In this document: positions 1,900 through 43,894 of the stretch, one piece after another | Layout: each line of letters starts with the position of its first letter | Position numbering within the stretch: position 1 is the first letter of the stretch | From: Macrostomum lignano | Taxonomy: Eukaryota | Direction of reading: 5' to 3' | Assembly: GCA_002269645.1 (NCBI GenBank) | Contig: NIVC01000211.1 | Span: 62,001 to 126,000 of the forward strand | DNA: 64,000 nucleotides | Program-made: the position numbers and the translations under genes | The notes under the pieces: model-generated | Seen by the model: only the letters and a program-made list of their open reading frames with translations | The model's database searches: none | Told to the model about the DNA's origin: nothing

Positions 1900-3326
1900 T
1901 AGTATATGCATGTACTTCTAAATGCCAAAAAAACTAAAAAATATCAAAATGAAGGAAGCTGCTGATGGTCAGATAAAATATTAGTTCGGTCTTGCAATTT
2001 AAAAGTAGGGCCGGGCCTTAAAAGAATAGGAATTGTTTCCACTCTAGTCTGCAAAGCATTCAATCAATCGCATCCTTCAATCAAAGAAGGAAAATAGTTT
2101 ACATTTGACATCAAATAACAAAATAAAAGAGGATATGTCATGCTTGATTAGTCTCCAAAAAAAATCGATGTGTCGGAGCCGCCCTTTCGCTTTTCTATCC
2201 GAGGACTACTATCGTCAATTTGAGCTATGTGGTCGTTGGGGAGTCATTGAAAATCTCATCTCTTTAGGTCTCAATTGACTCCAGTGGGATATAGCTAATT
2301 ATGGGATAAATGAGAATCTTATATGTCAACTCTGATACCATATATTGGATTGTTCTGCATTAAAAATGTGAATAATAATGATCTTCAAATTCCTAAACAA
2401 TGCCAACGTGCTTCTCAGTGTACGCGTCATTGGCAAATTGCTATTTTTAGCCAAACTGCTCAAGTACCAATAATTACTTGATCAATAATTGCTTGAAGGC
2501 TTAAATTGAAGCCATCCGGAGAGTTGCATCATGCCAGGCAGTCAGTGCTGCATTGACCAGACAATGTGAACACTCTGGTAGGCCTTGCCGTCCATTGACG
2601 AGCTCCACAGCTTCAGCTGGAACTTGTTGACAACGACAAGCTTGGAACAGCGCCTGACAGCATTCGATCCGACGGTGTTGTCGATGAACTGAGACTCTCC
2701 ACGCTCAGCGGCTTGCATCAATATCATGTGGCAGGTGCAGTACAACGGCAAGGTTTTTCAGCTGCACCAGATCCTTGGCTTCAGTGGCGTATGAGAAGAT
2801 CCATGCCCTCATGGACCACACGCATGTTGTGCAGAATTGTTACATATGGAGGCGATAGATATGATGATGATATTATGATGTTTTTTGAGCATGTTCAACC
2901 CTCTCGCTTAAAGCTGCATTACAGTGTAATTAAGATGAGTTACTAATGTGCAAGAGCATAGTTAGAGCATGCCTAGCTTTTCACTACATGTAATAATATG
3001 CTTTAACTCTTATACTTCAGGAGCAGCTGCAGCGTGCAGGTTTCTATATTGTTAAATATTTATACGGTCAAAACCCCGTGCTTGTCACTACATTTATATA
3101 TTCTTGGGCTGTAATTATACTCACGTACAGAGTTTCGAAGGCATAAAACTTAAACCCTTTCTGCATTTACTTATTATTCTTCGTATGCTATATTATGCAT
3201 GCAAAAATAATATCATTTAATATGCATTGAAAGCATGAAAGTAATTCATATCAGTACACAATAATTAGCGAGTAACAACCGCGTGTTCAAGTAGACCACA
3301 TCCGACTATAGATTGCCGCGAGCCCA

Positions 3327-3797
3327 CTACTGAACAAATCCTTTGTTGTCGAAAGCTGCAGGAGCAGCGGCAGCTGGACTACGACTCATCCTTCGACTGG
3401 CTGCCAGCTGCATTGCCCTGGCCGTCACGCTGTCGATGTCCGACTCTGTGGCGTCGCTGTCGGTTGAACCGAACTCCGAACCAGACTCAGCGTTCTCATC
3501 GTTGTCCTCGCCTGCACCAACTACAACTCGAACTTCAGCAGCAGAATTTCGATGAGCGGCACCAGCTGGACTGGCCGAATACTCGGCTGGCGTTTTTCTA
3601 CGCCTCATGGCAATTGCGATGCAGTGCCCGATGCAGGTGAGGCTGAGCAATAAGAAGATTGTGATGACAAACATGAGCACAGCAATAAGCAGGTTTCCAT
3701 CGGGTTGGCCAGCTGAAGTTTGCGGGGCCTGGCCGGGCACTGGAGCCGCTGTTGGGTAGGCGGTGTCGCACGCCAGCCAGGACTGAGTGCCGCCCAT
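3327..3797 (-). CDS. Intronless orphan single-pass membrane protein, 156 aa
   Basis: ATG at 3797, GC-rich ORF. One hydrophobic segment (LLIAVLMFVITIFLLLSLTCIGHCIAIA) is followed by RRRK, then an acidic Ser-rich tail ending FDNKGFVQ. No cleavable signal peptide. A TATA box lies upstream. Confidence 0.7.
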   Translation of the reverse strand: MGGTQSWLACDTAYPTAAPVPGQAPQTSAGQPDGNLLIAVLMFVITIFLLLSLTCIGHCIAIAMRRRKTPAEYSASPAGAAHRNSAAEVRVVVGAGEDNDENAESGSEFGSTDSDATESDIDSVTARAMQLAASRRMSRSPAAAAPAAFDNKGFVQ

Positions 3798-3885
3798 GCT
3801 TATTGCGCTCTCTTGCAATTGTAGATTCTCTCTACTGAGAAGTTCCAATCTCAAATTGTTCCTTAAGCATGCTTCTAAAACGGTC

Positions 3886-4459: not shown

Positions 4460-5170
4460 GTCGATCAGCAAACTTATTGCCTCAATGGCCAGATAAAACA
4501 TCCAGCTCATGTCTGCGGGCCGGATGAGAGTGGAAAGGAGAGGAAATAGGGGAGAGAAAGAAAGAGGAGATGAGATATGACAAACGAGAGGGGAGGTGAG
4601 AGGCGAGATGAGTGAGACGAAAGGAGATAATCGGAGAGGAGGGGAGAGGAGAGGTGAGGAGAGGAGAGGAGAGGAGAGGAGAGGAGAGGAGAGGAGAGGA
4701 GAGGAGAGGAGAGGAGAGGAGAGGAGGGAGAGGAGAGGAGAGGAGAGGAGAGGAGAGGAGAGGAGAGGAGAGGAGAGGAGAGGAGAGGAGAGGAGAGGAG
4801 AGGAGAGGAGAGGAGAGGAGAGGAGAGGAGAGGAGAGGAGAGGAGAGGAGAGGAGAGGAGAGGAGAGGAGAGGAGAGGAGAGGAGGGAGAGGAGAGGAGA
4901 GGAGAGGAGAGGAGAGGAGAGGTGAGGAGAGGAGAGGAGAGGAGAGGAGAGGAGGGAGAGGAGAGGAGAGGAGAGGAGAGGAGAGGAGAGGAGAGGAGAG
5001 GAGATAAGAGGAGATAAGAGGAGAGAGCCAAGAGAGGAGAGGAGAGGAGAGCAGGAGAGATAACTGAGAAGTGGTGAACCTTGAGCGGGCCGGATTGCCA
5101 CTCTATTAAAGTGTCGGAGGACCCAAGGGCCGGATAGAGAGGCTTGCGTGCCGGAGATTGCGCACCCCTG
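4460..5170. mobile_element. Degenerate hAT-type MITE carrying an (AGAGG)n tract; same family as 58579-59209
   Basis: 5' part GATCAGCAAACTTATTGCCTCAATGGCCAGAT matches GATCAGCAAACTTTTTACCTCAAGGGCCAGAT at ~58583. 3' part GGGCCGGATTGC…GGGCCGGATAGAGAGGCTT…CACCCCTG matches the end of the 58579 copy. Left TIR and TSD are eroded. Confidence 0.65.
4548..5070. repeat. Polypurine (AGAGG)n microsatellite
   Basis: Long near-perfect GAGAG/AGAGG run. It explains the SSPLL/RGEER junk ORFs. Confidence 0.97.
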
Positions 5171-10671: not shown

Positions 10672-13600
10672 ATGGCAGGCATGGAAGCTGAAATAGTCAA
10701 AGATGAAACTGGTCAAGAACTAGTCAAACTTGTCATTGTTGACGAGACCAATCAAGGCCAGCCATCTTATGCTTATGTCACGCCTCAAGATGCCCAGAGA
10801 ATTCTATCTGGCGAAGCCACCTTGCAAATTGATGAGGAAGGCAATGCTGTTATTGTGGCTACAGAACAGCAGCAGGCTGGTGATGTGGAGACCACTGCTC
10901 AGAGTGAGCAGCAGCAAGTGAGTTCGAATTATTGTATTGAGAAAACTAAAATTGTGTTTAATTATATATATGCAGTGTACTGAGTTTTGCTAAATGATAA
11001 TGTCCAAGTCTCAGAATTTAAATGCCTGGTCGCTGTACTACTCCAATGCGCTCTCTATCAACCCCTGCCCCCAATGTGCACTCTATCAACCCCTACCCCC
11101 AATGTGCACTTATCTATCAACCCCTACCCCCAATGTGCACTCGATCAACCCCTACCCACAATGTGCACTTATCTATCAACCCCTACCCCCAATGTGCACT
11201 CTGAACCCCTACCCCAATGTGCACTCTGAACCCCTACCCCCAATGTGCACTCGATAAACCCCTTCCCACAATGTGCACTTATCTATCAACCCCTACCCCC
11301 AATGTGCACTCTATCAACCCCTACCCCCAATGTGCACTCGATCAACCCCTACCCACAATGTGCACTTATCTATCAACCCCTACCCACAATGTGCACTTAT
11401 CTATCAACCCATACCCACAATGTGCACTTATCTATCAAACCCTACCCCCAATGTGCACTTATCTATCAACCCCTACCCACAATGTGCACTTATCTATCAA
11501 CCCCTACCCACAATGTGCACTCTATCAACCCCTACCCCCAATGTGCACTCTATCAACCCCTACCGCCAATTCGCACTCTATCAACCCCTACCCCCAAAGT
11601 GATCTCTATCAACCCATTGATCAACCCCTACCCCCAATGTACACTCGATCAACCCTTACCCAGTGTACACTCTTACAATCTAATTTTTTGTTTTAAAAGG
11701 CTGAGTCTGCCGAAACGAAGCCAGCGGGCTCTGCTGTTGCGTCCCAGCAGCAGCAACAGCAACAGCAAGAATCCGCAGGCGGCGAAGGTGATGAAGAACA
11801 ATTGATCATCACGGAGGAACCTGGCAAAAATGGCGGCCCGCCAACCGTAATCCTCAGCGATTCCCATGGCAACGTGATCACTCGCAAGGAGGTTACAAAT
11901 CCTGATGAGCCAGTTATGCTAGACTATGGCATTCACAAGATCCAATACGTAATGCAGTCAGCTCACGCTGCTGCCACAGCCGCGGCCGCATCTGCTGCTG
12001 CAGCCACTCCCGGTTCGTCATCAAGTGGTAAACTCGCGGCTTCCTCTACTGCGGCTGCTCAGCCACAACAGGCCGCCACAGTGCCCAGTGGCTTATCGAA
12101 AACTTCCGCGGCTAATGTCACCGCTCAGTTCAGGAGCACCTATCTGCAGCAGGAGCATCTGGATGCGCTGAAGGACGCTGTGGCGTTCCTGTTGAAGGGT
12201 TTGAAGGTAATGACTGTTTCTGTACCCTCGCATGAGTCAGTGACTGTTTCTGTACCCTCCCATGAGTCAGTGACTGTTTCTGTACCCTCCCATGAGTCAG
12301 TGACTGTTTCTGTACCCTCCCATGAGTCAGTGACTGTTTCTGTACCCTCCCATGAGTCAGTGACTGTGTTTCTGTACCCTCCCATGAGTCAGTGACTGTT
12401 TCCGTACCCTCCCATGAGTCAGTGACTGTTTCTGTACCCTCCCATGAGTCAGTGACTGTTTCTGTACCCTCCCATGAGTCAGTGACTGTGTTTCTGTACC
12501 CTCCCATGAGTCTGTGACTGTTTCTGTACCCTCCCATGATTCAGTGACTGTTTCTGTACCCTCCCATGAGTCAGTGACTGTTTCTGTACCCTCCCATGAG
12601 TCAGTGACTGCTTCTGTACCCTCCCATGAGTCAGTGACTGTTTCTGTACCCTCCCATGAGTCAGTGACTGCGTTGCTATACCCTCCGTGCATCAATACTT
12701 TGTTGATCCCAGATCCCGTGTCTTCCTTGTTCAATACGCTAACCCCAAGCCAATGAACACACTCAGGACCGAGTATTCTACCCCGAGCCCTATCACAAGC
12801 GCTTAGGCAGCTACCAAGCCTACCAAGAGATGGTCAGACTGCAGAGCATCAGCCCAGAGACCGCCACCGAGTCACAACTGGCGCTGCTGCGTCGTCACTC
12901 GATGCTATTCCGACCAAGCGGTCCCAACAGCCGGCCGCTGACTCTCTACGAGCTGTCAGTCAACGAAGCCGCCGCTCAGATCTGCGCCGCTCATCCTGCT
13001 CTACTGTTTCATCGACGGGATTTGGTCAGCTACGCTAGGCAGGCTGTGAAGTACACTGGCATTGATTTTCCAGTGTCTTCACCTGGGCCATCCATTGGAA
13101 CTGTGAGTGGCTTGGTTGCTTAGATTGGCCTGCTCAAAAGTCAGATGATTTCAATCTTCCGAAATCCTCCCAGATCCCCAGTTGCTGGGCCACAGCCTCC
13201 CAGATCCTCAGTTGCTGGGCCAGCCTCCCAGATCCTCAGTTGCTGGGCCAGCCTCCCAGATCCCCAGTTGCTGGGCCAGCCTCCCAGATGTCAGTTGCTG
13301 GGCCAGCCTCCCATATCCTCATTTGCTGAGCCAGCCTCCCAGATTATCAGTTGCTGGGCCAGCCTCCCAGATCCTCAGTTTCTGGGCCAGCCTCCCAGAT
13401 CCCCAGTTGCTGGGCCAGCCTCCCAGATCCTCAGTTTCTGGGCCAGCCTCCCAGATCCCCAGTTGCTGGGCCAGCCTCCCAGAGTGTCAGTTGCTGGGCC
13501 AGCCTTCCAGATCCCCAGTTGCTGGGCCAGCCTCCCAGATCCTCAGTTGCTGGGCCTGCCTCCCAGATCCTCAGTTGCTGGGCCAGCCTCCCAGAGTGTC

Positions 13601-16600
13601 AGTTGCTGGGCCAGCCTTAAGCCAACTTGGATCCCACTAAGGTGATTCCTCCCCACCCGCAGGCCGGCATGCAGGCCATGGGCCACCGAGCTGCCTCAGC
13701 CTCCTCATACCAGAAGTCCGCACCAGCCGCAGCCTCCAGCCTTGCCGGTCGGTCATCTGTCGCCGGCAGCAGCCGACTAAACGAAGAGGAGCAGGCCCTG
13801 ATCCGCCAGACTGTGCAAGCAATGCTCAGCGAAGTGGCCTCCGTGCGCAACAAAGACCGCTACTCTTGTTCCGCTATCGAGCGCTATCTCTACGACGATA
13901 CTCGCCGACTACAAGAGTTGAAGCAAGCCGGCCAGTTGGACAAGAATCTGGCTTTCCTGCGTCAGCTGGCCGTTATACACGGCCGGTTCACCCTGGGCCA
14001 CATCAACCCGCAGGCCGTGCTGACTCCATTCGAAGCCGCTTGCAACGAAGCCGCCGTCTGGTTTGCCTACGAGAATCCAGCCGTGCTAACGCACCGAAAG
14101 CTGCTCATTGAACTGTGCAAACGCGCTGTGAGATCAACTGGCAGGTATTTCCCACCGACTGGCGGCATGCCCAGCGATCCAGCTGGCGGTGCAGCCGCTC
14201 AGAACCTGACCATCACCTCGCGCGAGAATTCCTTTCACATATCGTTTCAACCGAACAAGCCGGAGCCCGAGTTCACCTCCACTGAGTCTGTCGTGCTTGA
14301 AGATGGCGCTGAAGATGACAGGCTCCCAGCTGAGGTCAACGAAGAGGCTTGGGCTGTAATCACCGGGGATCAGGATACCGAGGCTGAAGCTCAGGTGAGG
14401 AAGTTTTTCCGGGTTTGTCTAGAAGAGTAACCATGAGCTTTAGAATCCCAAATTTTCAGAATGGGTGTTTTAGAATCCCAGATCCCTAGAACTGGTGTTT
14501 TAGAATCCCAGATCCTCACAATGGGAGTTTTAAAATCCCAAATCCCCGCAATGGGTTTTAGAATCCCAGCTCTTCACTATGAAGTTTTAAATTCCCAGAA
14601 GATCGTCAGAATGGGTGTTTCAGTATCCTAGATTTCAAGAATACGAGTTTTAGAATCCCAGATCCCAAGAATGGATATTTCAGAATCCCAGATCCCAAGA
14701 ATGGATATTTCAGAATCCCAGATCCCAAGAATGGGTATTTCAGAATCCCAGATCCCAAGAATAAGTATTTCAGAATCCCAGATCCCAAGAATGGGTATTT
14801 CAGAATCCCAGATCCCAAGAATGGGAGTTTTAGAATCCCAGATCCCAAGAATGGGTTTTTCAGAATCCCAGATCCCAAGAATGGGTATTTCAGAATCCAA
14901 GATACCAAGAATGGGAGTCTTAGAATCCAAGATCCCAAGAATGGGAGTTTTAGAATCCAAGATACCAAGAATGGAAGTTTTAGAATCCCAGATTTCAAGA
15001 ATAAGAGTTTTAGAATCCCAGATCTCAAGAATGGGAGTTTTAGAATCCCAAATCCTCACTATGTTAGTTTTAAACACCGAAATCCTTAAACATAAATTTG
15101 AAATTTATACTGATTTTGTTTTCCACACAGGGCCGGACCCTGCGCATGACCTGCACCATAGAGGAGAACTGCCTCACCGATACCCAAATTCTCGTCGCCT
15201 CCGGCGCTCACGACATTCGTCACGTGACCTCGCTAAATCTGAGCGGCCTCGGCTTGACCTCAATTAACCCCGTTCACCTGTCCAAATGCGCTTTTCTACG
15301 TCAGCTAGATCTGAGCGAGAATGCGCTGCAGTTCTTGCCCAGGTGTCTGTATCTGCCCCGACTGACTGTGCTGGACATTTCTGGCAATAATTTTCAGCAT
15401 GCACCTCTGGTGGAGCAGTTTCCTCTTCTAGAGGAGCTCAAGGTGAGTGATCTGCATGTAGATTCTCTAGTCCAGCTCTCATTGAGATTCCAGCGTCTCT
15501 AGTCCAGCTCTCATTGTGAGATTCCAGCGTCTCTAGTCCAGATCTCATTGTGAGATTCCAGCGTCTCTAGTCCAGCTCTCATTGAGATTCCAGCGTCTCT
15601 AGTCCAGCTCTCATTGTGAGATTCCAGCGTCTCTAGTCCAGCTCTCATTGTGAGATTCCAGCGTCTCTAGTCCAGCTCTCATTGTGAGATTCCAGCGCGT
15701 CTCTAGTCCAGCTCTCATTGTGAGATTCCAGCGTCTCTAGTCCAGCTCTCATTGTGAGATTCCAGCGCGTCTCTAGTCCAGATCTCATTGTGAGATTCCA
15801 GCGTCTCTAGTCCAGATCTCATTGTGAGATTCCAGCGTCTCTAGTCCAGCTCTCATTGTGAGATTCCAGCGTCTCTAGTCCAGATCTCATTGTGAGATTC
15901 CAGCGTCTCTAGTCCAGATCTCATTGTGAGATTCCAGCATCTCTAGTCAAGATCTCATATTAAGATTTTGATGTCTCTAATCCAGATCTCATACTGGAAT
16001 TCCAGTGTCTCCAATCCAGATCTCATAGTGGGATTTCAGTGCCCCTTTTCAGCTCCCATTTTGAGATTCCAGTGTCTCCAATACAGATCTCATAGTGAAA
16101 TTCCAGTGTCTCCAACCCAGATCTCAGTGAGATTCCAGATCTCATAGTGAGATTACAGATCTCATAGTGAGATTGCAGATCTCATAGTGAGATTACAGAT
16201 CTCATAGTGAGATACCAGAGTTTCCAATCCAGATCTCATAGTGAGATTCCAGTGTCTCCAACCCAGATCTCATAGTAAGATTCCAGATCTCATAGTAAGA
16301 TTCCAGATCTCATAATGAGATTCCATACCTATAATGTTTCCCAATCGTCTCTATCCAGGTCGACGACAGCGTGCTGTGCAGCGACCTCACTCTGTCCTAC
16401 TTCAACCCGCGCCTTCGCACCCTGAACGGCCGGCCATTCAACCCATCCGGCCGCCTCACCGACTCCATGCTGAACGCTCTGCAAAGATCACGTGACGCCA
16501 TCGTGAAGCAGATCGGCTACAAGTGGAACGTGGACTACGCCGAGCACTACAAGAAAGGCGTACCGGAGCGCGACGCAAATAAAGTGATTGAAAGCTTCGT

Positions 16601-19600
16601 GTTGGCTTTGAAGTCTCGCCCGTTGCCGCTGGAAGAGCCTTGGTCCCAGTTGAAAGATGTACTCATCAGGCGCTATGTTGGCGACATGCTCAACAGTAAA
16701 CTGATTCTTGACAAGTCAATCCCGGCCGAAGTTCGCGATATTGAAGATGGCGAAGGCGAGTCTTCTATTGATCCTCAGGAAGCCAACCGAGCCGTGCTAG
16801 AGCGAGCTGTCCGTCGGGGTATGGCAGTTGTGTACACCGTTGTCAAGTCTCAGGGCGTTGTTGGCAAGCCTACTGCCGACTTCCTGCCAAGCGAAATCTC
16901 ATTGAGAGGCGCTGCTGCCGCCGCCGCAGCAGCCGCCGCAGCGGAGCGCAAGCGTGCTAGGCCGGGTCAGGACGACTGGGAGTCCGTGGGGGTGCGCACT
17001 CGACCGACTAATAAACGGAAACGCTACACCGAACTTGGCGTCTTCTCTGAGGAGGAGTATCGAACTTTGAAGACTATCGAAGAGGAGAAGGAGAATCAGA
17101 GGCGCGAGATGACTGTACAGCAGCGTGAGTTGTGCATGTTGTAGCTTTTATTTTATAGCCTTCGTTTCTTAGAAACTGTCTTTAGGTCTTGGTTGGTTTG
17201 TTTCTAAGAATCTGTCTCCTTTACTGTACAGGTTTATTTCGAAGAAACTCCTCTTTTTCGGTTAGTTTCTAAGAATCTGTCTAATAGTCTGGTTTGTTTC
17301 TAAGAATCTGTCTAGTAGTCTTTGGTTTGTTTCAAAGAATCTGTCTAATAGTCTGGTTTGTTTCTAAGAATCTGTCTAATAGTCTGGTTTGTTTCTAAGA
17401 ATCTGTCTAATAGTCTTTGGTTTGTTTCTAAGAATATGTTCAATAGTCTTTGGTTTGTTTCTAAGAATATGTCTAATAGTCTGGTTTGTTTCTAAGAATC
17501 TGTCTAATAGTCTGGTTTGTTTCAAAGAATCTGTCTAATAGTCTGGTTTGTTTCTAAGAATCTGTCTAATAGTCTTTGGTTTGTTTCTAAGAATATGTCT
17601 AATAGTCTTTGGTTTGTTTCTAAGAATATGTCTAATAGTCTGGTTTGTTTCTAAGAATATGTCTAATAGTCTTTGGTTTGTTTCTAAGAATATGTCTAAT
17701 AGTCTTTGGTTTGTTTCTAAGAATATGTCTAATAGTCTTTGGTTTGTTTCAAAGAATCTGTCTAATAGTCTGGTTTGTTTCTAAGAATCTGTCTAATAGT
17801 CTGGTTTGTTTCTAAGAATCTGTCTAATAGTCTTTAGTTTGTTTCTAAGAATCTGTCTAATAGTCTTTGGTTTGTTTCTAAGAATCTGTCTAATAGTCTT
17901 TAGTTTGTTTCTAAGAATCTGTCTAATAGTCTTTGGTTTGTTTCTAAGAATCTGTCTAATAGTCTTTGGTTTGTTTCTAAGAATCCTTCACTGTACAGGT
18001 TTATTTCTAATAAACTCCTATTTTTCGGTTAGTTTCTTAGAAACTGTCTTTAGGTCGAGGTGGGCTTGTTTCTAAGAATATGTCTCCTTTACTGTACAGG
18101 TTTATTTCTAAGAAACTCTTATTTTTCAGTTATTTCTTAGAAACCGTCTTTAGGCCTTGGCTGGTTTGTTTCCAAGAAGCAGTCCTAGTCTTGATTGTTT
18201 TGTTTCTAAGAACCTGTCTCAGTCTTCGTTTATTTCCAAGAAACAATTGTCTAACATTTTTTATTTTATTTCTAACAAACAACTCATTGCAGGTATGTTT
18301 CTAAGAAACATTCTGCTTTGCTGGTTTTATTTCTTAGAAACGTTTTTGGAGTCTTCATTGATTTTTTCTAATAATCTCTCCTAGTCTTGGTTTATTTCGA
18401 AAAATCACTTTCAGTCTGTTGCTTTGTTTCTAAGAATCTGTTTCCAAGTCTGTTAGTGTAGATTTGCGTTCAACTACAATGCCTCCCAACCCTGCCACAC
18501 AGGCCTTCAATACCAGGAGATCAAGACCAAGTCCAGCTATACCGAACCGGCCTCGGTTCCAGCGCTGCCGCAGTCTCTCACGGCGTCGGCTGCAGGCGCC
18601 ACAGCTGCCAGCGCCTCCGGTCGCGCCCGGGTCAGCTTCCACGAAGAGCCGATGGACGAGTCTGTAGGCGGTAATCTGTCCGACTCGGATATCAACTTGG
18701 CCGGTTCGTCCAGCGGCGCCGTTGCCATCAGCGGCGGTGCCGGAGTGTCCGGTGGCGGCAACGAACTCCGACCCATCGTCACGGCCTACACCCGGTCACT
18801 GCGCGATGTCAGCGATAAATATCGCTACCAACCGGTGCACTTTATCCGCTGCCATTCCAAGGATAATAATCCTATGGATGCCGAGACCAAAGTCTGGCGT
18901 TGCGCATTCGAACCGGCCATCGGTTCCAGCGGAGAAGCCATGCCGGACGGGACAACTACTATTGTGGCCACCTGCGGCGGGGACAGCGTCTGTCTAATTG
19001 ACTGCGACACTGGCAAAGTGGTGAAACGGTTCAAGCATTTGAGCGAGGAGTTCTATTGTCTGGCTTGGACCGTTATCCCCATTGAGGATAAGCCGACTAA
19101 GATTCTGGGTGAGTTGCTATGGGAATTTGTGTTTTTTATAACGCTTTTGGTGGGATTCTAACTCGTGGTGGGGGAGTTCGGGATTTCTAATTAGTGTGGG
19201 AGATTTTAAGGGGATTCTATGTAGTATGGGGATTTTTAGGGATTAGAATTCGTGTGGAGAATTTTGAGGGGATACTAATTAGTGTGGGATTATTATGGGG
19301 TTATAATTAGTATAGGATTCTAATTAGCGTGTGATAAATATGAAATTCTAATTAGTGTGAGATTTAGGGATTCTAATTAGTGTGGGATTATTATGAGATT
19401 CTAATTAGTGTGGGATTATTATGAGATTCTAATTAGCGTGGGATTATTATAGGATTATTATGGAATTCTAATTAGTGTGGGATTATTATGGAATTCTAAT
19501 TAGTGTGGGATTATTTAAGGATTGTAATTAGTGTGAGGACTTTCGGGGATTTCTAATAGGATTTTTATCTGAAGATTTATAGCATACGTATATGAGGATG

Positions 19601-21408
19601 CTTTCAGCAATCTTTAAAACTCCCCTTTGTTTTTATCCCATTCCCAACTATGATTTTCCCAACCAACCCCATTCGCAGCCGCCGCTGGCCGACTCCGCAT
19701 GATCCGGCTGCTGTACCCCGACCAGATGGTCTGCTACAGCGAGATGCAGGGCCACCGGGACGAGATCGCCTGTCTGGCCTTCCACCCCAACCAGCCCACC
19801 GTGCTGTTCTCAGGCGACAGCAAAGCCGCCATCCTGGTCTGGGATATCGGCATCCCCATGCCGCCGGACTTCCAGGCCAGCTACACCCTGCTGGCTAAGC
19901 TGCGCTGTCCCCGTCCGGATGTGAATCCCGTGCTCAATCTGGTGTTCATGCCGACTCTGGACTGCCTCATTGCCGGCTGCGAAGATGGCATCTTCGTCTG
20001 GAAGATGGCCAGCGTGATGTCTGACAACAGCAAGGCGCTGCCTGAGCGGGAACCAGACGCTGAGATCAAAGTGCCAACTAATAAAGAGCCCTGCTTTGAC
20101 GGCCTGTGCCTGCTGAATGACACAGTTCTAGTGAGCAAATGCGTTGAAGAGGGCCGACTGGTGATCTTCGACCTGTACTCTGTGTATGCCAAGATGACCG
20201 GCCATTTCAAGACCATCTTTGTCGACATTCTCGGCTCGGTTCGGTGGAAAACTACTGACGAGATTTATATCAACTGCTCGGCCAGGCCCGGTGTCCAGGC
20301 CGTCACCTGCGGCGACAATGAGGGCAACATCTGGATTTACGATTTTAGCCGGATTAACTGGGCCGGCGTAAGCCGCAAGAACAAGTTCCGCATGGAGGCT
20401 TCCAAGATTCTGCCCTGGCCGCAGTGCTCCGTTGGAGGCGACGGCAGGATGCCTGAGGTGAGCTGGTTTATTCTATTATAATCTAATAAGCCTCCCAGAT
20501 CCTCAGTTGCTGGGCTGCCAGCCTCCCAGATCCTCAGTTGCTGGGCCAGCCTCCCAGATCCTCAGTTTCTGGGCCAGCCTTCCAGATCCTCAGTTGCTGG
20601 GCCAGCCTCCCAGATCCCCAGTTGCTGGGCTGCCAGCCTCCCAGATCCTCAGTTGCTGGGCCAGCCTCCCAGATCCTCAGTTTCTGGGCCAGCCTCTCAG
20701 TCTCAGATCCTCAGTTGCTGGGCCAGCCTCCCAGATCCTCAGTTGCTGGGCTGCCAGCCTCCCAGATCCTCAGTTGCTGGGCTGCCAGCCTCCCAGATCC
20801 TCAGTTGCTGGGCCAGCCTCCCAGATCCTCAGTTTCTGGGCCAGCCTTCCAGATCCTCAGTTGCTGGGCCAGCCTTCCAGATCCCCAGTTGCTGGGCCAG
20901 CCTCCCAGATCCCCAGTTGCTGGGCCAGCCTTCCAGACCCCCAGTTGCTGGGCCAGCCTCCCAGATCCTCAGTTGCTGGGCCAGCCTTCCAGATCCCCAG
21001 TTGCTGGGCCAGCCTCCCAGATCCCCAGTTGCTGGGCCAGCCTCCCAGATCCTAGATCCAGCCACATCGGCAGCTCCCCCCAACCCGCTCGCTACCCAGG
21101 AGAGCTCGGCAGGCAGCCGGGAGCACAGCCCAGTTGTGAACACCACAGACGCCAGCGGCGATGGCCAGTTCATCTGCGCAGTCACGGACAACAATCTGGT
21201 GTGCATCTGGAAGGCGTCAGCAGCGGAACCTGGCGCCGCTGGTCAGGGCGAGCTGGACCAGTCCGGCACCTCCACTGCCGTGGCTGCAGCCAGCAGCAGC
21301 GTCCAGCTGGCCTCCTCTGGCCAGCATGAGGTGGCGGACTTGGACGCTGAGCCGCGGTCTCGGGCGGCTGGCAGCGGCGGAGTCGGCCGGCCCAAGCGAT
21401 CCACTTAG
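10672..21408 (+). CDS. LRWD1: LRWD1/ORCA orthologue with an N-terminal extension carrying two NAB-type NCD2 domains; 9 exons, ~1530 aa
   Basis: Exons 10672-10917, 11700-12206, 12767-13102, 13663-14394, 15131-15442, 16359-17124, 18503-19108, 19679-20457, 21100-21408. All introns are GT-AG with compatible phases (0,0,0,0,0,1,1,0); total 4593 nt. LRWD1 signatures: HFIRCHSKDNNPMDAETKVWRCAFEP, VATCGGDSVCLIDC, EEFYCLAWT, CAVTDNNLVCIWK, plus an N-terminal LRR. Basic NLS-like stretches ERKRARP and RPTNKRKR lie in the linker. Confidence 0.85.
11050..11665. repeat. Intron 1 minisatellite, ~30-34 bp (CAATGTGCACTTATCTATCAACCCCTACCCC)
   Basis: About 19 tandem variants. Confidence 0.95.
12145..13065 (+). 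other. NCD2-like domain 1 (end of exon 2 plus exon 3)
   Basis: LRRHSMLF…LTLYELSVNEAAAQICAAHPALLFHRRDLVSYARQAV aligns by eye with the NAB NCD2 core (IRKYSAIY…LTLHELTVNEAAAQLC…ALLTRRDELFALARQ). Confidence 0.85.
12208..12680. repeat. Intron 2 minisatellite, 30 bp (GTGACTGTTTCTGTACCCTCCCATGAGTCA)
   Basis: Near-identical tandem copies starting right after the donor site. Confidence 0.97.
13168..13617. repeat. Intron 3 minisatellite, 28 bp (CAGTTGCTGGGCCAGCCTCCCAGATCCT)
   Basis: Tandem copies. The same monomer occurs at 20490-21052 and 24365-24540. Confidence 0.97.
13777..14145 (+). other. NCD2-like domain 2 (exon 4)
   Basis: LRQLAVIHGRF…LTPFEAACNEAAVWFAYENPAVLTHRKLLIELCKRAV retains the I-x-GRF, LT-x-x-E, NEAA and L-T-x-R motifs of NCD2. 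Confidence 0.75.
14437..15075. repeat. Intron 4 minisatellite, 30 bp (AGAATCCCAGATCCCAAGAATGGGTATTTC)
   Basis: About 20 tandem copies, degenerate at the edges. Confidence 0.95.
15131..15442 (+). CDS. LRWD1: Exon 5: leucine-rich repeats of LRWD1
   Basis: TSLNLSGLGL…LRQLDLSENAL…LTVLDISGNNF…QFPLLEELK show the LxxLxLSxNxL pattern. Confidence 0.88.
15462..16330. repeat. Intron 5 minisatellite, 34 bp (CTCTAGTCCAGCTCTCATTGTGAGATTCCAGCGT), grading into shorter AGATCTCATAGTGAGATT units
   Basis: Homogeneous 5' part, degenerate 3' part. Confidence 0.95.
17255..17985. repeat. Intron 6 minisatellite, 31-33 bp (GTTTGTTTCTAAGAATCTGTCTAATAGTCTG)
   Basis: About 20 tandem copies, most containing TTCTAAGAA. 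Confidence 0.95.
18503..21408 (+). CDS. LRWD1: Exons 7-9: WD40 propeller of LRWD1
   Basis: GHRDEIACLAFHP…ILVWD, GDNEGNIWIYD, NNLVCIWK. Splice phases match across 19108/19679 and 20457/21100. Confidence 0.9.
19165..19560. repeat. Intron 7 degenerate minisatellite (CTAATTAGTGTGGGATTATTATG…)
   Basis: Recurring CTAATTAG core at roughly 28-30 bp spacing. Confidence 0.8.
20490..21052. repeat. Intron 8 minisatellite, 28 bp; same monomer as intron 3
   Basis: CAGTTGCTGGGCCAGCCTCCCAGATCCT tandem copies, with a GCT(G) insertion variant. Confidence 0.97.
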
Positions 21409-21486: not shown

Positions 21487-21492
21487 AATAAA
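21487..21492 (+). terminator. Polyadenylation signal AATAAA of the LRWD1 gene
   Basis: AATAAA 79 nt after the stop codon. Confidence 0.55.
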
Positions 21493-22189
21493 AACTACAG
21501 TAATATCTCTGTCGGCCTACTAACAATGTAGCAAGTAAAAATAGTTAGTAGCATGATGAGGGTTGTAATGTTATGTTATATATAATAATTGCGTCATTTA
21601 AATATTTGTTACTTATCCCATCATTGTGCAAAACTATATTCTTTTAATTTTTGTTGTTTTTTGTGTGGCATAAAATGGCAGCTGCTGAAAAAAAACATTT
21701 ACGCCCCCGTAATGTTTACACTCGCACTACTTTGCATTAGTAGTATCACGAATGCGTTTCTACTATATGTTACTAATTAGTAGTCTGATATCTAATCATG
21801 GTAAGTAATATTGTTGTAAAATTCTTGTCTACGAGACGCGTTAAAAATTCAAATTTGTGCAACGTAACTTATAAATTTTTGGTTGATGTCTTGTAATTAT
21901 TATTAATAGCTGTCTGGTTGGTTAATCTTGAAATAAATTATTAATTAAATAAATACAAACATTCATATTCTACTACTGTCGGCTTGGCAACCATTTGTAC
22001 TTTTATTATCTATTTTTGGCCTGAAAAGATGATTTAATTAAATCTTCTCTGCAAACTGTTTTATTAGCAGTTATGATAATTATAATAATTAGTTTTTAAT
22101 TAAAACATTAGCTAATTAGTATTAGTTGATCATGGGGTGAAAATCATTTTAACAATCATTCAACAATACAACAATCATTTTGACATAAT

Positions 22190-23100
22190 GAGATTTGAGA
22201 CTTGACTGATTGATTATCAATGAGATTTTAGAGTTGATCAATTGATTTTCAATGGGATTAGAGAGTTGATCAGTTTATTATCAATGGAATAAGAGAGTTG
22301 ATCAATTGATTTTCCATGAGATTTGAGAGTTGATCAGTTTATTATCAATGGAATAAGAGAGTTGATCAATTGATTTTATATGAGATTTGAGAGTTGATCA
22401 GTTTATTATCAATGGTATAAGAGAGTTGATCAATTGATTATCAATGAGATTTGAGAGTTGATCAGTTTATTATCAATGGAATAAGAGAGTTGATCAATTG
22501 ATTTTCTATGAGATTTGAGAGTTGATCAGTTTATTATCAATGGAATAAGAGAGTTGATCAATTGATTTTCTATGAGATTTGAGAGTTTATCAATTGGTTT
22601 TCCATGAGATTTGAGAGTTGATCAATTGATTTTCCATGAGATTTGAGGGTTGATCAGTTTATTATCAATGGAATAAGAGAGTTGATCAATTGATTTTCTA
22701 TGAGATTTGAGAGTTTATCAATTGGTTTTCCATGAGATTTGAGAGTTGATCAATTGATTTTCCATGAGAATTGAGGGTTGATCAGTTTATTATCAATGGA
22801 ATAAGAGAGTTGATCAATTGATTTTCTATGAGATTTGAGAGTTGATCAATTGATTTTCCATGAGATTTGAGAGTTGATCAATTGATTTTCCATGAGATTT
22901 GAGGGTTGATCAGTTTATTATCAATGGAATAAGAGAGTTGATCAATTGATTTTCTATGAGATTTGAGAGTTTATCAATTGGTTTTCCATGAGATTTGAGA
23001 GTTGATCAATTGATTTTCCATGAGATTTGTGAATTGATCAATTGATTTTCCATGAGATTTGAGAGTTGATCAGTTTATTATCAATGAGATTTGATCAATA
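22190..23100. repeat. Intergenic minisatellite of two alternating 32-bp monomers
   Basis: GAGAGTTGATCAATTGATTTTCCATGAGATTT and GAGAGTTGATCAGTTTATTATCAATGGAATAA, lying between convergent genes. Confidence 0.95.
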
Positions 23101-26306: not shown

Positions 26307-36205
<9,899 letters not shown>

Positions 36206-37704: not shown

Positions 37705-39083
37705 CTCCAGCACCAAGGGGCGCCAGCACCAAGTGGCAGTGGCGTAGCCAGGGGGGCGGGGGGGGGGGCCGCGGCCCCCCTAATCGCCTGAGGGGGGTGG
37801 GGTTGGGCGCGGCGGGTACCAAAAACCATGAGGCAATTGAGTGCCTGCGGCGCCAAAATGAGTGCCTGCGGCGCCAAATTGAGTGCCTGCGGCGCCAAAA
37901 TGAGTGCCTGCAGTGCCAAAATAAGTGCCTGCGGCGCCAAAAGTGGCAATGGCATAAGGCATGGCCAGCCAGGCCAACCTGCCCCCCCCCCCAATTGAAA
38001 TTCCTGGCTACGCCACTGCCAAGTGGCGCCAGCACTAAGTGGCGCCAGCACCAAGGGGCGCCAGCTCCAAGTGGCGCCAGCACCAAGGGGCGCCAGCACC
38101 AAGGGCGCCAGCACCAAGGGGCGCCAGCACCAAGGGGCGCCAGCACCAAGGGGCGCCAGCACCAAGGGGCGCCAGCACCAAGGGGCGCCAGCACCAAGGG
38201 GCGCCAGCACCAAGGGGCGCCAGCACCAAGGGCGCCAGCACCAAGGGCGCCAGCACCAAGGGGCTTTAGCACCAAGGGGCGCCAGCACCAAGGGGCGCCA
38301 GCACCAAGGGGCGCCAGCACCAAGGGGCTTTAGCACCAAGGGGCTTTAGCACCAAGGGGCTTTAGCACCAAGGGGCTTTAGCACCAAGGGGCGCCAGCAC
38401 CAAGGGGCGCCAGCACCAAGGGGCTTTAGCACCAAGGGGCTTTAGCACCAAGGGGCTTTAGCACCAAGGGGCTTTAGCACCAAGGGGCTTTAGCACCAAG
38501 GGGCTTTAGCACCAAGGGGCTTTAGCACCAAGGGGCTTTAGCACCAAGGGGCTTTAGCACCAAGGGGCGCCAGCACCAAGGGGCTTTAGCACCAAGGGGC
38601 GCCAGCACCAAGGGCGCCAGCACCAAGGGGCGCCAGCACCAAGGGGCTTTAGCACCAAGGGGCGCCAGCACCAAGGGGCTTTAGCACCAAGGGGCGCCAG
38701 CACCAAGGGGCGCCAGCACCAAGGGGCGCCAGCACCAAGGGGCGCCAGCACCAAGGGGCGCCAGCACCAAGGGGCGCCAGCACCAAGGGGCGCCAGCACC
38801 AAGGGGCGCCAGCACCAAGGGGCGCCAGCACCAAGGGGCGCCAGCACCAAGGGGCGCCAGCACCAAGGGGCGCCAGCACCAAGGGGCGCCAGCACCAAGG
38901 GGCGCCAGCACCAAGGGGCGCCAGCACCAAGGGGCGCCAGCACCAAGGGGCGCCAGCACCAAGGGGCGCCAGCACCAAGGGGCGCCAGCACCAAGGGGCG
39001 CAAGCACCAAGGGGCATCAGCACCAAGGGGCGCAAGCACCAAGGGGCACCAGCACCAAGGGGCGCCAGCACCAAGGGGCGCCA
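37705..39083. repeat. 16-bp minisatellite array (AAGGGGCGCCAGCACC / AAGGGGCTTTAGCACC), interrupted by a MITE
   Basis: Long homogeneous blocks of the two variants. Confidence 0.97.
37737..38018. mobile_element. hAT-type MITE, 282 bp, inserted in the 16-bp array
   Basis: Perfect 16-bp TIRs CAGTGGCGTAGCCAGG / CCTGGCTACGCCACTG. Perfect 8-bp TSD CCAAGTGG at 37729-37736 and 38019-38026. Five internal 21-bp repeats. Confidence 0.95.
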
Positions 39084-41642: not shown

Positions 41643-42034
41643 ATCCAAAAGAAGCAAAGTCGTGTTATTCTTATTGTACAGTAGAACGTGGTTACAGTGT
41701 TTAATGAGGAGGCAGCGGAGGTACCCCACTGTATCAGGTAGGATTTAGTTCGCTTTTTAAATCCTTGATCTCGTGTTCACTTCGAAAAAAAGTCTAAGCC
41801 TTTCCTAGAAATAAATTACACTCCAACACAGTCCTCTCGGCCGCCTCTTTCCTGTTCTGACTGCAGCTCACTTGAGTTGAATCTCAATTGTGTAGAATTA
41901 GAAATAATGAAGCATGCAGAAGCGGATTAATTTCGCTGTAGAAAGCTGTTTGTACGGAAACTGAGTATATTGGTAACTATGCATGCGAGTAAATGCATAA
42001 AGTACTTATCTGTCGGGATATTTTTCGCGCTGAC

Positions 42035-42722
42035 ACCCTACTCAAATGAAATGGCACCCTACTCAAATGAAATGGCACTCTACTCAATAGAAATGGCACC
42101 CTAATCAATAGAAATGGCACCCTACTCAAATGAAATGGCACCATACTTAAATAAAATGCCGGCTCTACTCAATTTAAATGGCACCCTACTCAAATAAAAT
42201 GCCGGCTCTACTCAATTTAAATGGCACCCTACTCAAATAAAATGCCGGCTCTACTCAATTTAAATAGCACCCTACTCAAATTAAATGGCACCCTACTCAA
42301 ATGAAATGGCACCCTACTCAAATGAAACGGCACCCTACTCAAATGAAACGGCACCTACTCAAATGAAATGGCACCATACTCAATTTAACTGGCACCCTAC
42401 TCAATTGAAATGGCAACCTACTCAAATGAAATGGCATCTTACTCAAATGAAACGGGACCCTACTCAAATGAAATGGCACCATACTCAATTTAACTAGCAC
42501 CCTACTCAAATGAAATGGCACCCTATTCAAATGAAATGGCACCCTATTCAAATGAAATGGCACCCTACTCAAATGAAATGGCACCATACTCAATTTAACT
42601 AGCACCCTACTCAAATGAAATGGCACCCTACTCAAATGAAATGGCACCCTACTCAAATGAAATGGCACCCTATTCAAATGAAATGGCCCCATACTTAATT
42701 TAACTGGCACTCTACTCAACTG
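42035..42722. repeat. 21-bp minisatellite (GGCACCCTACTCAAATGAAAT)
   Basis: About 30 copies with variants. Confidence 0.95.
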
Positions 42723-43894
42723 AAATAAGTATGCCTCTATATGAAAGCTCTTGGCTTGTCCCAGGTGTCGCAGGCAAGTAATGGGCTAACTGAAACTTTC
42801 GTGGTTGAATGAATGCCTCAATAATTGATGCTGTTTGGTCAGTCAGCACAGAAAGGTGTTTAAATTTCTCAGAAACTGCAGGTGAAGTTGGGGTGGAGGG
42901 CATTATAGTGCAGGTAACTTGAGAGTTTATAATCGAATAAAATGTCCATTACATGTCTGTGTGCTTTGTCTAGTATGTCTTGTCTATAAAACGTTAATGT
43001 CCTGTCTAAAAGAGGTCAATGTGTCCTGTCTAAAAGAGGTCAATATTTCCTGTCTATAAGATCCAAAACTTGTTTAGAAAGCCTGTCTAATCAATACTAA
43101 TCCTACGAATGTAAGACAAGAAGGTCATGTATGTTTTCCGACAGATGGCGTAAGTGTTTGCTATTTATTTACTCATTTTCTTGTGCAACATTGCACTTAA
43201 TCCACAAAGAAGAGCATCAAATATGTTTTGCTTCTGTGTCTATCTACAATATTCTAAATAGAACTTGGTTTTTTTACTGTCTTAAATTTCAGACGAATCC
43301 TGTATGTATAATAGAATATTTACTGTATACAATCTGTAAGCCTAGCAACTGAAATAGTAACAGCGAGTCTGTAAGGCACCCGACAGCAGAAGGTGCATGC
43401 ACCGAAGCGGATCAACTGCTGACTATAGAATCAGGAAAAAAAATTAAAATACAGAATCATCCCGACTGACTGATTGACTGCATGTGCACTTCAATTAGAA
43501 TGAAAATCTGCATCCTAGTTGACAGGAGATACTTTGCCCTCTATACATAGCTCTATCTGCGTGTGCAGTGCACAGCGAATGGAAGACAGCAGGCAAGACT
43601 GCGGAGGCGGAGACGCTGTACCTACAATAAAAGTGCTAACGGATCGATGTAGGGATTCAATCTAAATTTATACAAAGCTAATCACCCTGCCGCCTACAAA
43701 CAGCCATCTAACGATTAATTTGACAACAGCTGGACAAAGTGGCGGATCAACTTGAACTGGGAATTTATATCTACTAGTAATTTGGAACAGTAGTATCCAA
43801 CCGGAACTAAGCGCTTCGCTACAAACCTGATGGATATTTTTACTTGATTTTTTGTTTGTTGCGCCTTATCTCAAACCTTAGGGCGATTCTGTCT

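What the first reader, a model, noticed from the sequence alone, without database searches (positions are those of the whole stretch)
10672..21408. LRWD1/ORCA fused to two tandem NAB corepressor (NCD2) domains
Seen in sequence: nine exons join in one open frame. Exons 2-4 encode two NCD2-like domains, exons 5-9 a full LRR+WD40 LRWD1, and no NCD1 domain is visible. Established: vertebrate LRWD1 (~650 aa) begins at the LRR and binds ORC and repressive histone marks. NAB proteins normally have NCD1 (EGR binding) plus a single NCD2 needed for transcriptional regulation. Inference: a ~1530-aa chimera could tie an NCD2 repression module directly to origin-licensing and heterochromatin machinery, independent of EGR. 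I know of no description of this architecture, but I could not search for one.
Basis: partly seen in the sequence, partly recalled or inferred. Interest (0 to 1): 0.85.

Follow-up and report, generated by a model that had tools for sequence, protein, structure and literature searches.

The report
Flatworm ORCA/LRWD1 with two NCD2 domains
This is one real gene of the flatworm Macrostomum lignano whose 1530-residue protein joins two NAB-type NCD2 repressor domains to a complete LRWD1/ORCA replication and heterochromatin protein, a fusion kept across flatworms but absent from the other animals sampled and apparently never described in a paper.

Summary
Nine GT-AG exons (10672-21408, + strand) join into a 1530-codon frame. 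This is exactly the deposited CDS PAA87918.1 (BOX15_Mlig008621g1) of Macrostomum lignano.

Pfam finds two NCD2 domains, each above the curated cut-off, and no NCD1. It also finds the LRWD1-specific LRR and WD domains. The best solved-structure matches are NAB1 NCD2 (2YUF) and LRWD1 (8SIY).

The main rival was two neighbouring genes in a trans-spliced operon, wrongly joined at 14394/15131. It is very unlikely:
- The same NCD2x2 + LRR + LRWD1-propeller chain occurs in trematodes, cestodes and monogeneans at 34-46% identity.
- In one related genomic contig a single exon runs from NCD2 copy 2 into the LRR cap, across the M. lignano junction.
- Met613 is Leu in every other flatworm.
- Intron 4 has no AATAAA or ATTAAA.
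- The deposited model comes from RNA-seq transcripts that were cut at mapped spliced-leader and poly(A) sites.

LRWD1 of annelids, molluscs, a brachiopod and vertebrates lacks NCD2, and Lingula has separate NAB and LRWD1 proteins.

So this is a flatworm-specific variant of LRWD1. It sits in databases as "hypothetical protein", and I found no paper on it. Its function (an EGR-independent repression or interaction module on ORCA) is inferred, not shown.

The parts
10672..10917 (+). Exon 1 (aa 1-82). It holds the start codon and a conserved N-terminal motif (aa 5-60, window 10684-10851).
   Evidence: for the exon. The motif is conserved in Mesocestoides and in contigs L006/L007 at 57-61% identity. 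Pfam finds no family here.
11700..12206 (+). Exon 2 (aa 83-251). It holds low-complexity Q/A runs, a conserved 'ITE...D..GN' module (aa 114-170, window 11793-11963) and the first helix of NCD2 copy 1 (from aa 226, window 12129).
12767..13102 (+). Exon 3 (aa 252-363), the core of NCD2 copy 1.
   Evidence: Pfam NCD2 49.3 bits. PDB 2YUF (NAB1 NCD2) matches aa 302-360 at E=1.7e-5.
13663..14394 (+). Exon 4 (aa 364-607). It holds a disordered spacer, NCD2 copy 2 (aa 401-535, window 13774-14178) and an acidic linker. It ends at the donor CAG|GTGAGG.
   Evidence: Pfam NCD2 28.8 bits. The AF2 model gives helical domains at segment residues 8-122 and 179-296.
14395..15130 (+). Intron 4, the disputed junction. 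It runs GT...AG in phase 0. A 30-bp minisatellite fills 14439-15055. The read-through stop TAA is at 14428-14430. It contains no AATAAA or ATTAAA.
   Evidence: The last six bases, ACACAG, do not fit the YTNCAG spliced-leader acceptor motif reported in PMC8629364.
15131..15442 (+). Exon 5 (aa 608-711), the LRR N-cap and leucine-rich repeats of LRWD1. The start of canonical LRWD1 aligns about 10 aa into this exon.
   Evidence: Pfam LRR_LRWD1 and the alignment.
16359..17124 (+). Exon 6, the end of the LRR domain and the middle region of LRWD1.
   Evidence: It is homologous to L006:4301-4429.
18503..19108 (+). Exon 7, a low-complexity middle region and the start of the WD_LRWD1 propeller (from aa 1075, window 18826).
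19679..20457 (+). Exon 8, the main part of the WD_LRWD1 propeller.
   Evidence: Pfam PF23215 200.6 bits. PDB 8SIY/8SIU LRWD1 at E=4e-69.
21100..21408 (+). Exon 9, the last propeller blade (to aa 1467, window 21216), a low-complexity tail and the stop TAG at 21406-21408.
21487..21492 (+). AATAAA hexamer about 80 nt after the stop codon, the likely poly(A) signal of the whole gene.

Best explanation
Window 10672-21408 is a single protein-coding gene of Macrostomum lignano, Mlig008621.g1. It is a flatworm ortholog of LRWD1/ORCA with a lineage-specific N-terminal extension of about 610 residues. The extension holds two small conserved modules of unknown fold and two NAB-type NCD2 helical domains, and it lacks the EGR-binding NCD1.

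Shown here: the fusion and the duplication of NCD2 both predate the split between Macrostomorpha and the parasitic Neodermata. The fusion point lies at the ancestral N-terminus of LRWD1.

Inferred mechanism: the C-terminal LRR + WD40 part does what LRWD1 does in mammals. That is, it reads repressive histone methyl marks, binds ORC and assembles heterochromatin factors. The NCD2 pair adds a repression or protein-interaction surface to the same polypeptide. NCD2 partners would then be brought to ORC and heterochromatin without any EGR transcription factor.
For: - Gene model: nine GT-AG exons give a 1530-aa open frame identical to the deposited PAA87918.1.
- Domains: both NCD2 copies score above the Pfam cut-off and no NCD1 is found; the LRWD1-specific LRR and WD models score 45.8 and 200.6 bits.
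- Solved structures: 2YUF (NAB1 NCD2) matches by sequence (E=1.7e-5) and by fold (Foldseek prob 1.00, TMt 0.61, the only real hit). 8SIY LRWD1 matches at E=4e-69.
- Conservation of the fusion: an exhaustive phmmer search with the NCD2 pair finds the same chain in other flatworms. Full chains are Dicrocoelium dendriticum (2092 aa), Mesocestoides corti (1950/1992 aa) and Fasciola gigantica (1605 aa). Partial chains are F. hepatica, Cichlidogyrus, Dibothriocephalus and Protopolystoma.
- Single exon: contig L006 has one exon (about 2821-3465) that encodes NCD2 copy 2, the linker and the LRR cap. It aligns to M. lignano aa 432-637, across the 607/608 junction.
- No conserved internal start: Met613 is Leu in all other flatworms, and canonical LRWD1 N-termini align just after it.
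- Intron 4 has no poly(A) hexamer and looks like the other seven introns.
- The deposited models derive from RNA-seq transcripts that were cut at mapped spliced-leader and poly(A) sites (PMC5730564).
- Copy 1 and copy 2 each form a clade across flatworms.
- Non-flatworm LRWD1 proteins are at most 691 aa and carry no PF04905.
- Function of the parts: NCD1 binds EGR1 and NCD2 represses (PMC8230482). The LRWD1 WD40 binds repressive marks and ORC (PMC9233303 and PMC4442312).
Against: - I could not view any read or cDNA that crosses 14394/15131. The RNA support is indirect, through the annotation pipeline.
- In all five neodermatan loci an intron follows NCD2 copy 2, so exon contiguity rests on one contig from an unidentified organism.
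- All flatworm proteins compared are predicted models.
- No biochemical datum exists for any flatworm LRWD1 or for the mechanism of NCD2.
- NCD2 copy 2 passes the Pfam cut-off only narrowly (28.8 against 25 bits).
Confidence: 0.85

Rival explanations
1. Two separate genes lie in one trans-spliced operon. A NAB-like gene would end at TAA 14428-14430. An ordinary LRWD1 gene would have its mRNA begin by spliced-leader addition at 15131 and start at ATG 15146, or at the ATG that ends the leader, which would be in frame. The 1530-aa CDS would then be an annotation artefact.
For: - M. lignano trans-splices about 30% of its genes and has many operons. The repeat-adjusted intergenic distance peaks near 100 bp, and the leader ends in ATG.
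- Apart from its minisatellite, intron 4 is about 120 bp long.
- A stop follows 11 codons after the donor, and an ATG lies 5 codons into exon 5.
- Every neodermatan locus also has an intron just after NCD2 copy 2.
Against: - The fused chain is conserved in at least four flatworm classes.
- A single exon spans the junction in L006.
- Met613 is not conserved.
- There is no AATAAA or ATTAAA in 14395-15130, while the true 3' end has one.
- The acceptor ACACAG does not fit YTNCAG.
- The transcript-based, TBONE-cut annotation keeps one gene in three paralogous loci, g1, g3 and g5.
Confidence: 0.04
2. Both forms exist. The fused 166-kDa protein is made. In addition, an internal spliced-leader site or promoter in intron 4 yields a shorter, vertebrate-like LRWD1 of about 918 aa that lacks the NCD2 pair.
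For: - The exon-5 acceptor is followed by an in-frame ATG.
- A leader that ends in ATG would also be in frame, because the junction is in phase 0.
- Such dual use of an acceptor is known in trans-splicing organisms (general knowledge).
Against: - The deposited annotation shows no separate short model.
- Met613 is specific to M. lignano.
- I have no direct evidence either way.
Confidence: 0.15
3. The upstream domains are not truly NAB-related. They would be helical domains that resemble NCD2 by chance, so the link to NAB carries no meaning.
For: - Identity to canonical NCD2 is only 23-36%.
- Copy 2 scores barely above the Pfam cut-off.
- The Foldseek E-value is modest, 6.5e-3.
Against: - Both copies independently pass the curated cut-off.
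- The same Pfam hit occurs in every flatworm ortholog, at up to 80 bits.
- In the exhaustive search, every lower-ranked hit I characterised was a canonical NAB or an NCD2 fragment.
- 2YUF is the only PDB match by sequence and the only confident one by fold.
- The signature L-T-x-[YH]-E-x-x-x-N-E-A-A-A is shared.
Confidence: 0.03

Closest known systems
LRWD1/ORCA (vertebrate and other non-flatworm orthologs; PDB 8SIY, 8SIU)
   Same: It has the N-terminal LRR domain, a middle region and the C-terminal LRWD1-type WD40 propeller. Pfam scores are 45.8 bits for PF23211 and 200.6 bits for PF23215. The WD domain is 35-40% identical to frog and Owenia LRWD1.
   Different: It carries about 610 extra N-terminal residues with two NCD2 domains and two further conserved modules, for 1530 aa in total. 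Annelid, mollusc, brachiopod and vertebrate LRWD1 are about 400-691 aa, and none of them carries PF04905.
NAB co-repressors (NAB1/NAB2; Drosophila Nab; mollusc and brachiopod NABs)
   Same: It has an NCD2 helical domain with the shared LT.YE...NEAAA signature, above the Pfam cut-off. It matches the NAB1 NCD2 structure 2YUF by sequence and by fold.
   Different: It has no NCD1/SAM domain, so no predicted EGR binding or NAB multimerisation. It has two NCD2 copies instead of one. Each copy forms its own flatworm clade outside canonical NAB. The copies are fused to LRWD1. No match to a NAB C-terminal (CHD4-interacting) region was seen.
Deposited flatworm orthologs: Mesocestoides corti A0A5K3F787/VDD75209.1, Dicrocoelium dendriticum CAH8620982.1, Fasciola gigantica TPP66409.1
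   Same: They show the same order of parts: N-terminal modules (Mesocestoides and Dicrocoelium), NCD2 x2, LRR, long middle region, WD_LRWD1. Identity is 29-46% in the NCD2 pair and 55-58% in the WD domain.
   Different: They are longer (1605-2092 aa). Mesocestoides and Dicrocoelium have two copies of the 'ITE' module where M. lignano has one. The Fasciola models lack the N-terminal modules and are named 'DEAD box ATP dependent RNA helicase'.

Membership tests
LRWD1/ORCA | LRWD1-type WD40 propeller at the C-terminus | tested here: met
   PF23215 scores 200.6 bits (cut-off 30.7) over profile positions 11-387 of 388. The best PDB match is 8SIY LRWD1, E=4e-69.
LRWD1/ORCA | LRWD1-type leucine-rich repeat domain N-terminal to the propeller | tested here: met
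   PF23211 scores 45.8 bits (cut-off 28). It aligns with the N-termini of Owenia, frog and crow LRWD1.
LRWD1/ORCA | Orthology: the closest relatives outside flatworms are LRWD1 proteins | tested here: met
   A profile of four flatworm WD domains retrieves named LRWD1 from brachiopod, annelids, molluscs, a hemichordate and vertebrates at E of 1e-113 to 1e-74.
LRWD1/ORCA | Binding to ORC and to H3K9me3, H4K20me3 and H3K27me3 | not testable with these tools
   This needs biochemistry. The residues that bind the marks are not yet defined in the literature I could read.
NAB co-repressor | NCD1 (SAM_NCD1, PF04904), the EGR-binding and multimerisation domain | tested here: not met
   No hit at E<=1 in the 618-aa upstream part or in the N-terminal 225 aa. 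Canonical NABs score 146-152 bits on this model.
NAB co-repressor | NCD2 (PF04905) | tested here: met
   Copy 1 scores 49.3 bits and copy 2 scores 28.8 bits (cut-off 25). 2YUF matches by sequence and by fold.
NAB co-repressor | Repression of EGR-dependent transcription | not testable with these tools
   This needs reporter assays. The absence of NCD1 predicts no direct EGR binding (inference from PMC8230482).
Two-gene spliced-leader operon (rival filing) | The upstream gene ends with a stop followed by a poly(A) signal before the downstream acceptor | tested here: not met
   A stop exists only in the unspliced reading (14428-14430). There is no AATAAA or ATTAAA in 14395-15130, whereas the gene's true end has AATAAA at 21487.
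Two-gene spliced-leader operon (rival filing) | A trans-splice acceptor motif and a conserved start codon for the downstream gene | tested here: not met
   The acceptor is ACACAG, against the YTNCAG motif. Met613 is Leu in six other flatworm sequences. In L006 the region is one exon.
Two-gene spliced-leader operon (rival filing) | Spliced-leader reads at 15131 and poly(A) reads after 14430 | not testable with these tools
Indirectly, the TBONE pipeline, which cuts at such sites, left the gene whole.

The most novel reading that the evidence does not exclude
The fusion could be a 'Rosetta stone'. NAB-type NCD2 domains, whose repression mechanism is still unclear, would work through ORCA/LRWD1, ORC or the H3K9 methyltransferase assemblies that ORCA organises. 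Flatworms would have made this partnership permanent by fusing the partners. Canonical NAB and LRWD1 would then interact, directly or through a shared partner, in other animals too.
Probability: 0.1. Interest if true: 0.8.

Novelty: new variant of a known kind. Interest (0 to 1): 0.55.

Why it matters
LRWD1/ORCA links origin licensing to repressive chromatin. NAB proteins are the co-repressors of EGR factors, and how their NCD2 domain represses is poorly understood.

A fusion of two NCD2 domains to ORCA has been kept since before the Macrostomorpha-Neodermata split and survived a later gene duplication. That points to a selected functional coupling. It offers a concrete, testable hypothesis for what NCD2 touches.

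It also matters for flatworm biology. M. lignano has transgenesis and RNAi, and its neoblasts depend on replication and chromatin control. In parasitic flatworms the fused protein differs in architecture from host LRWD1.

For genome annotation, it is a worked example of telling a true fusion from an operon artefact in a trans-splicing organism.

Tried and rejected
- **Full-length word-index search.** It was swamped by low-complexity words and returned only the cluster of the protein itself.
- **Word-index search with the 314-aa NCD2 pair.** It returned nothing, not even the protein itself. This is a limit of the index. The exhaustive search solved it.
- **Exon-contiguity test in five neodermatan loci.** It did not settle fusion against operon, because an intron follows NCD2 copy 2 in all of them. 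Contig L006 settled it.
- **Bacterial promoter/terminator scan of intron 4.** It is irrelevant for a eukaryote and I disregarded it.
- **Organism of run DRR639055.** I could not identify it.
- **Supplementary annotation for Mlig008621.** None was found.
- **Test of methyl-lysine cage residues.** Abandoned, because the LRWD1-mark interface is not defined in the paper I read.
- **Other window features.** The window holds no tRNA gene, no Rfam family and no spliced-leader RNA gene.
- **Canonical NAB in flatworms.** Whether flatworms also keep an NCD1+NCD2 NAB stays open. The canonical NAB hits I could name were from molluscs and a brachiopod, plus one partial nematode fragment.
Full report
**1. 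What is in the sequence**

Stop-free stretches on the + strand between 10.6 and 21.4 kb fall into nine blocks bounded by canonical splice signals.
- The exons are 10672-10917, 11700-12206, 12767-13102, 13663-14394, 15131-15442, 16359-17124, 18503-19108, 19679-20457 and 21100-21408.
- Joined, they give a 4593-nt CDS of 1530 codons, about 166 kDa.
- All eight introns are GT...AG, and seven of the eight donors read GTGAG.
- The 14394/15131 junction is in phase 0 on both sides.
- Left unspliced, exon 4 would read on for 11 codons to TAA 14428-14430.
- Five codons into exon 5 there is an ATG at 15146.

**2. Identity of the locus**

- The window is Macrostomum lignano assembly Mlig_3_7 (GCA_002269645.1), scaffold NIVC01000211.1, with window position + 62000 = record position.
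- The annotated CDS of PAA87918.1 (BOX15_Mlig008621g1) spans exactly window 10672-21408, and its product equals my translation.
- The near-identical paralog g5 (PAA48055.1) differs by D151H.
- Paralog g3 (PAA53358.1, 1126 aa) also crosses the junction.
- Three UniProt models of different lengths (A0A1I8J7L8 and A0A1I8FVM4 at 1506 aa, A0A1I8IBM6 at 2361 aa) are also fused.

**3. Domains**

- Pfam gives NCD2 (PF04905) twice. Copy 1 scores 49.3 bits and copy 2 scores 28.8 bits, against a cut-off of 25.
- It gives no NCD1 even at E<=1.
- It gives LRR_LRWD1 at 45.8 bits and WD_LRWD1 at 200.6 bits.
- Against solved structures, the upstream part matches only NAB1 NCD2 (2YUF, E=1.7e-5). The downstream part matches LRWD1 (8SIY, E=4e-69), and EED and coatomer propellers follow far behind.
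- An AlphaFold model of the NCD2 pair, built on a five-sequence alignment, has mean pLDDT 76. It shows two all-helical domains with the same helix pattern, joined by a disordered spacer.
- The only confident Foldseek match of that model in the PDB is 2YUF (prob 1.00, TMt 0.61).
- The N-terminal 225 residues and the middle region match no Pfam family.

**4. One gene or two?**

M. lignano trans-splices about 30% of its genes and has many operons. Its leader ends in ATG, and repeat-adjusted intergenic distances in operons peak near 100 bp (PMC8629364). The serious rival is therefore a NAB-like gene ending at 14430 followed by an ordinary LRWD1 gene trans-spliced at 15131. Seven lines of evidence argue against it.

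(a) *The fusion is conserved.* I ran an exhaustive phmmer search of 1.84 billion representative proteins with the NCD2 pair. The best non-self hits carry the same chain:
- Dicrocoelium dendriticum CAH8620982.1, 2092 aa.
- Mesocestoides corti A0A5K3F787/VDD75209.1, 1950/1992 aa.
- Fasciola gigantica TPP66409.1, 1605 aa.
- Partial models from F. hepatica, Cichlidogyrus casuarinus, Dibothriocephalus latus and Protopolystoma xenopodis.

(b) *Exon structure in other species.* In all five neodermatan loci an intron follows NCD2 copy 2, so those loci alone cannot exclude an operon. Genomic contig L006 (Logan DRR639055_140512, organism not identified) settles it.
- It has one exon, from acceptor ...TTTTCTAG| to donor |GTGAGT at about 2821-3465.
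- That exon encodes NCD2 copy 2, the linker and the LRR N-cap without a stop.
- It aligns to M. lignano aa 432-637, across the 607/608 junction.
- The same contig carries homologs of exon 1, NCD2 copy 1 and the LRR.

(c) *No conserved internal start.* In a ten-sequence alignment, Met613 of M. lignano is Leu in all six other flatworm sequences. Canonical LRWD1 of Owenia, frog and crow begins a few residues downstream. The fusion point is therefore the ancestral LRWD1 N-terminus, and there is no conserved internal initiator.

(d) *No poly(A) signal.* Intron 4 has no AATAAA or ATTAAA, whereas the real 3' end has AATAAA 80 nt after the stop.

(e) *Acceptor motif.* The acceptor ACACAG does not fit the YTNCAG trans-splice motif.

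(f) *Intron 4 looks like the other introns.* It is 736 nt against a range of 560-1378 nt, and a 28-34-bp minisatellite fills it as in the other seven.

(g) *The deposited models are transcript-based.* They come from StringTie/TACO and de novo transcripts. The TBONE pipeline cut these at experimentally mapped spliced-leader and poly(A) sites, and TransDecoder called the ORFs (PMC5730564). The gene was left whole at three loci.

I could not look at reads, so an additional short isoform that starts at exon 5 is not excluded.

**5. Evolutionary picture**

- The whole chain is orthologous from its first residues. M. lignano aa 1-60 and the 'ITE...D..GN' module (aa 114-170) align with Mesocestoides (E=4e-18), which has the module twice.
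- In a neighbour-joining tree, the NCD2 copy 1 sequences of five flatworms form one clade. The copy 2 sequences form a second clade and canonical NAB NCD2 a third. The internal duplication therefore predates the Macrostomum-Neodermata split.
- A profile of flatworm LRWD1 propellers retrieves LRWD1 from Lingula, Owenia, Ridgeia, Crassostrea, several gastropods, a hemichordate and many vertebrates. All are at most 691 aa and none carries PF04905.
- Lingula also has a separate canonical NAB.
- The fusion therefore looks specific to flatworms, at least to Rhabditophora. That Macrostomorpha is an early branch of that group is general knowledge, not tested here.

**6. How it most likely works**

*Shown.* One polypeptide combines an LRWD1-type LRR and propeller with two NCD2 domains and no NCD1.

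*Established elsewhere.*
- LRWD1/ORCA uses its WD40 domain to bind repressive histone marks.
- It associates with ORC, helps pre-RC formation and assembles H3K9 methyltransferases (PMC9233303 and PMC4442312).
- In NAB2, NCD1 binds EGR1, NCD2 contributes to repression, and a separate C-terminal region binds CHD4/NuRD (PMC8230482).

*Inferred.* Flatworm ORCA carries an EGR-independent NCD2 interaction or repression surface to origins and heterochromatin. I put about 0.4 on this functional reading and about 0.85-0.9 on the architecture.

**7. Novelty and score**

- The architecture is already in public protein databases, mostly as 'hypothetical' or mis-named entries.
- Full-text searches for LRWD1 with NAB, flatworm terms or planarian found no description.
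- It is a new variant of a known kind: a real, conserved, lineage-specific domain fusion with a testable functional implication, but not a new type of system.
- Interest: 0.55.

Noticed in passing
window 11043-11615, 12211-12686, 13166-13617, 14439-15055, 15464-16325, 17260-17985, 19180-19537, 20489-21053: A tandem array of 28-34-bp units (about 15-24 copies in most of them) largely fills every one of the eight introns of the gene. Introns 3 and 8 carry the same 28-bp unit (CCTCCCAGATCCTCAGTTGCTGGGCCAG). Several arrays stay open in frame for more than 100 codons and mimic coding sequence.
   Followed up: partly
window 22187-23094, 27691-28186, 28687-29339, 29691-30232, 31554-32696, 38019-39083, 42034-42726, 44889-47072, 47712-48351, 49052-50380, 51823-53350: The rest of the window is also studded with long minisatellites of 16-61-bp units, up to 2.2 kb long. 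They explain the strong local GC-skew swings in the composition profile. There are also a (GGAGA)n array at 4633-5051 and a (GACA)n array at 30651-30997.
   Followed up: no
window 10684-10851 (aa 5-60) and 11793-11963 (aa 114-170): Two N-terminal modules with no Pfam family are conserved between M. lignano, Mesocestoides, Dicrocoelium and contigs L006/L007. The 'ITE...V.L.D..GN.I..K' module is present twice in the cestode and trematode proteins. Their fold and function are unknown.
   Followed up: partly
proteins P0110/P0116/P0012 versus P0010/P0011 (loci L001-L005): WD-domain identities do not follow the species tree: Fasciola-Cichlidogyrus 89%, Dicrocoelium-Mesocestoides 74%, Fasciola-Dicrocoelium 65%. 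The NCD2 trees split the same way. This suggests that two paralogous lineages of the already-fused gene exist in Neodermata.
   Followed up: partly
L006 (4554 nt) and L007 (4290 nt), Logan run DRR639055: An unidentified organism, presumably a free-living flatworm, carries two diverged copies of the fused gene with short introns. L006 has the single exon that spans NCD2 copy 2 to the LRR cap.
   Followed up: partly
protein P0002 = PAA53358.1 (Mlig008621g3); corresponds to window ~20198-20368 in the +1 frame: The model of paralog g3 ends in '...SARPGSRPSPAATMRATSGFTILAGLTGPA'. This is the alternative-frame reading of exon 8. It points to a frameshift in that copy, from decay or from an assembly error.
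   Followed up: no
proteins THD19080.1, THD18537.1, TPP66409.1 (Fasciola): The Fasciola orthologs are named 'DEAD box ATP dependent RNA helicase' in GenBank. In TPP66409.1, the one scanned, Pfam finds only NCD2, LRR and WD-propeller domains. This looks like a propagated mis-annotation.
   Followed up: partly
window ~3327-3866 (-) and ~26307 onward (-): Two neighbouring annotated genes lie on the opposite strand. One is a 179-aa protein with no Pfam hit. The other is a KIF1-like kinesin (Kinesin, FHA and KIF1B domains).
   Followed up: no
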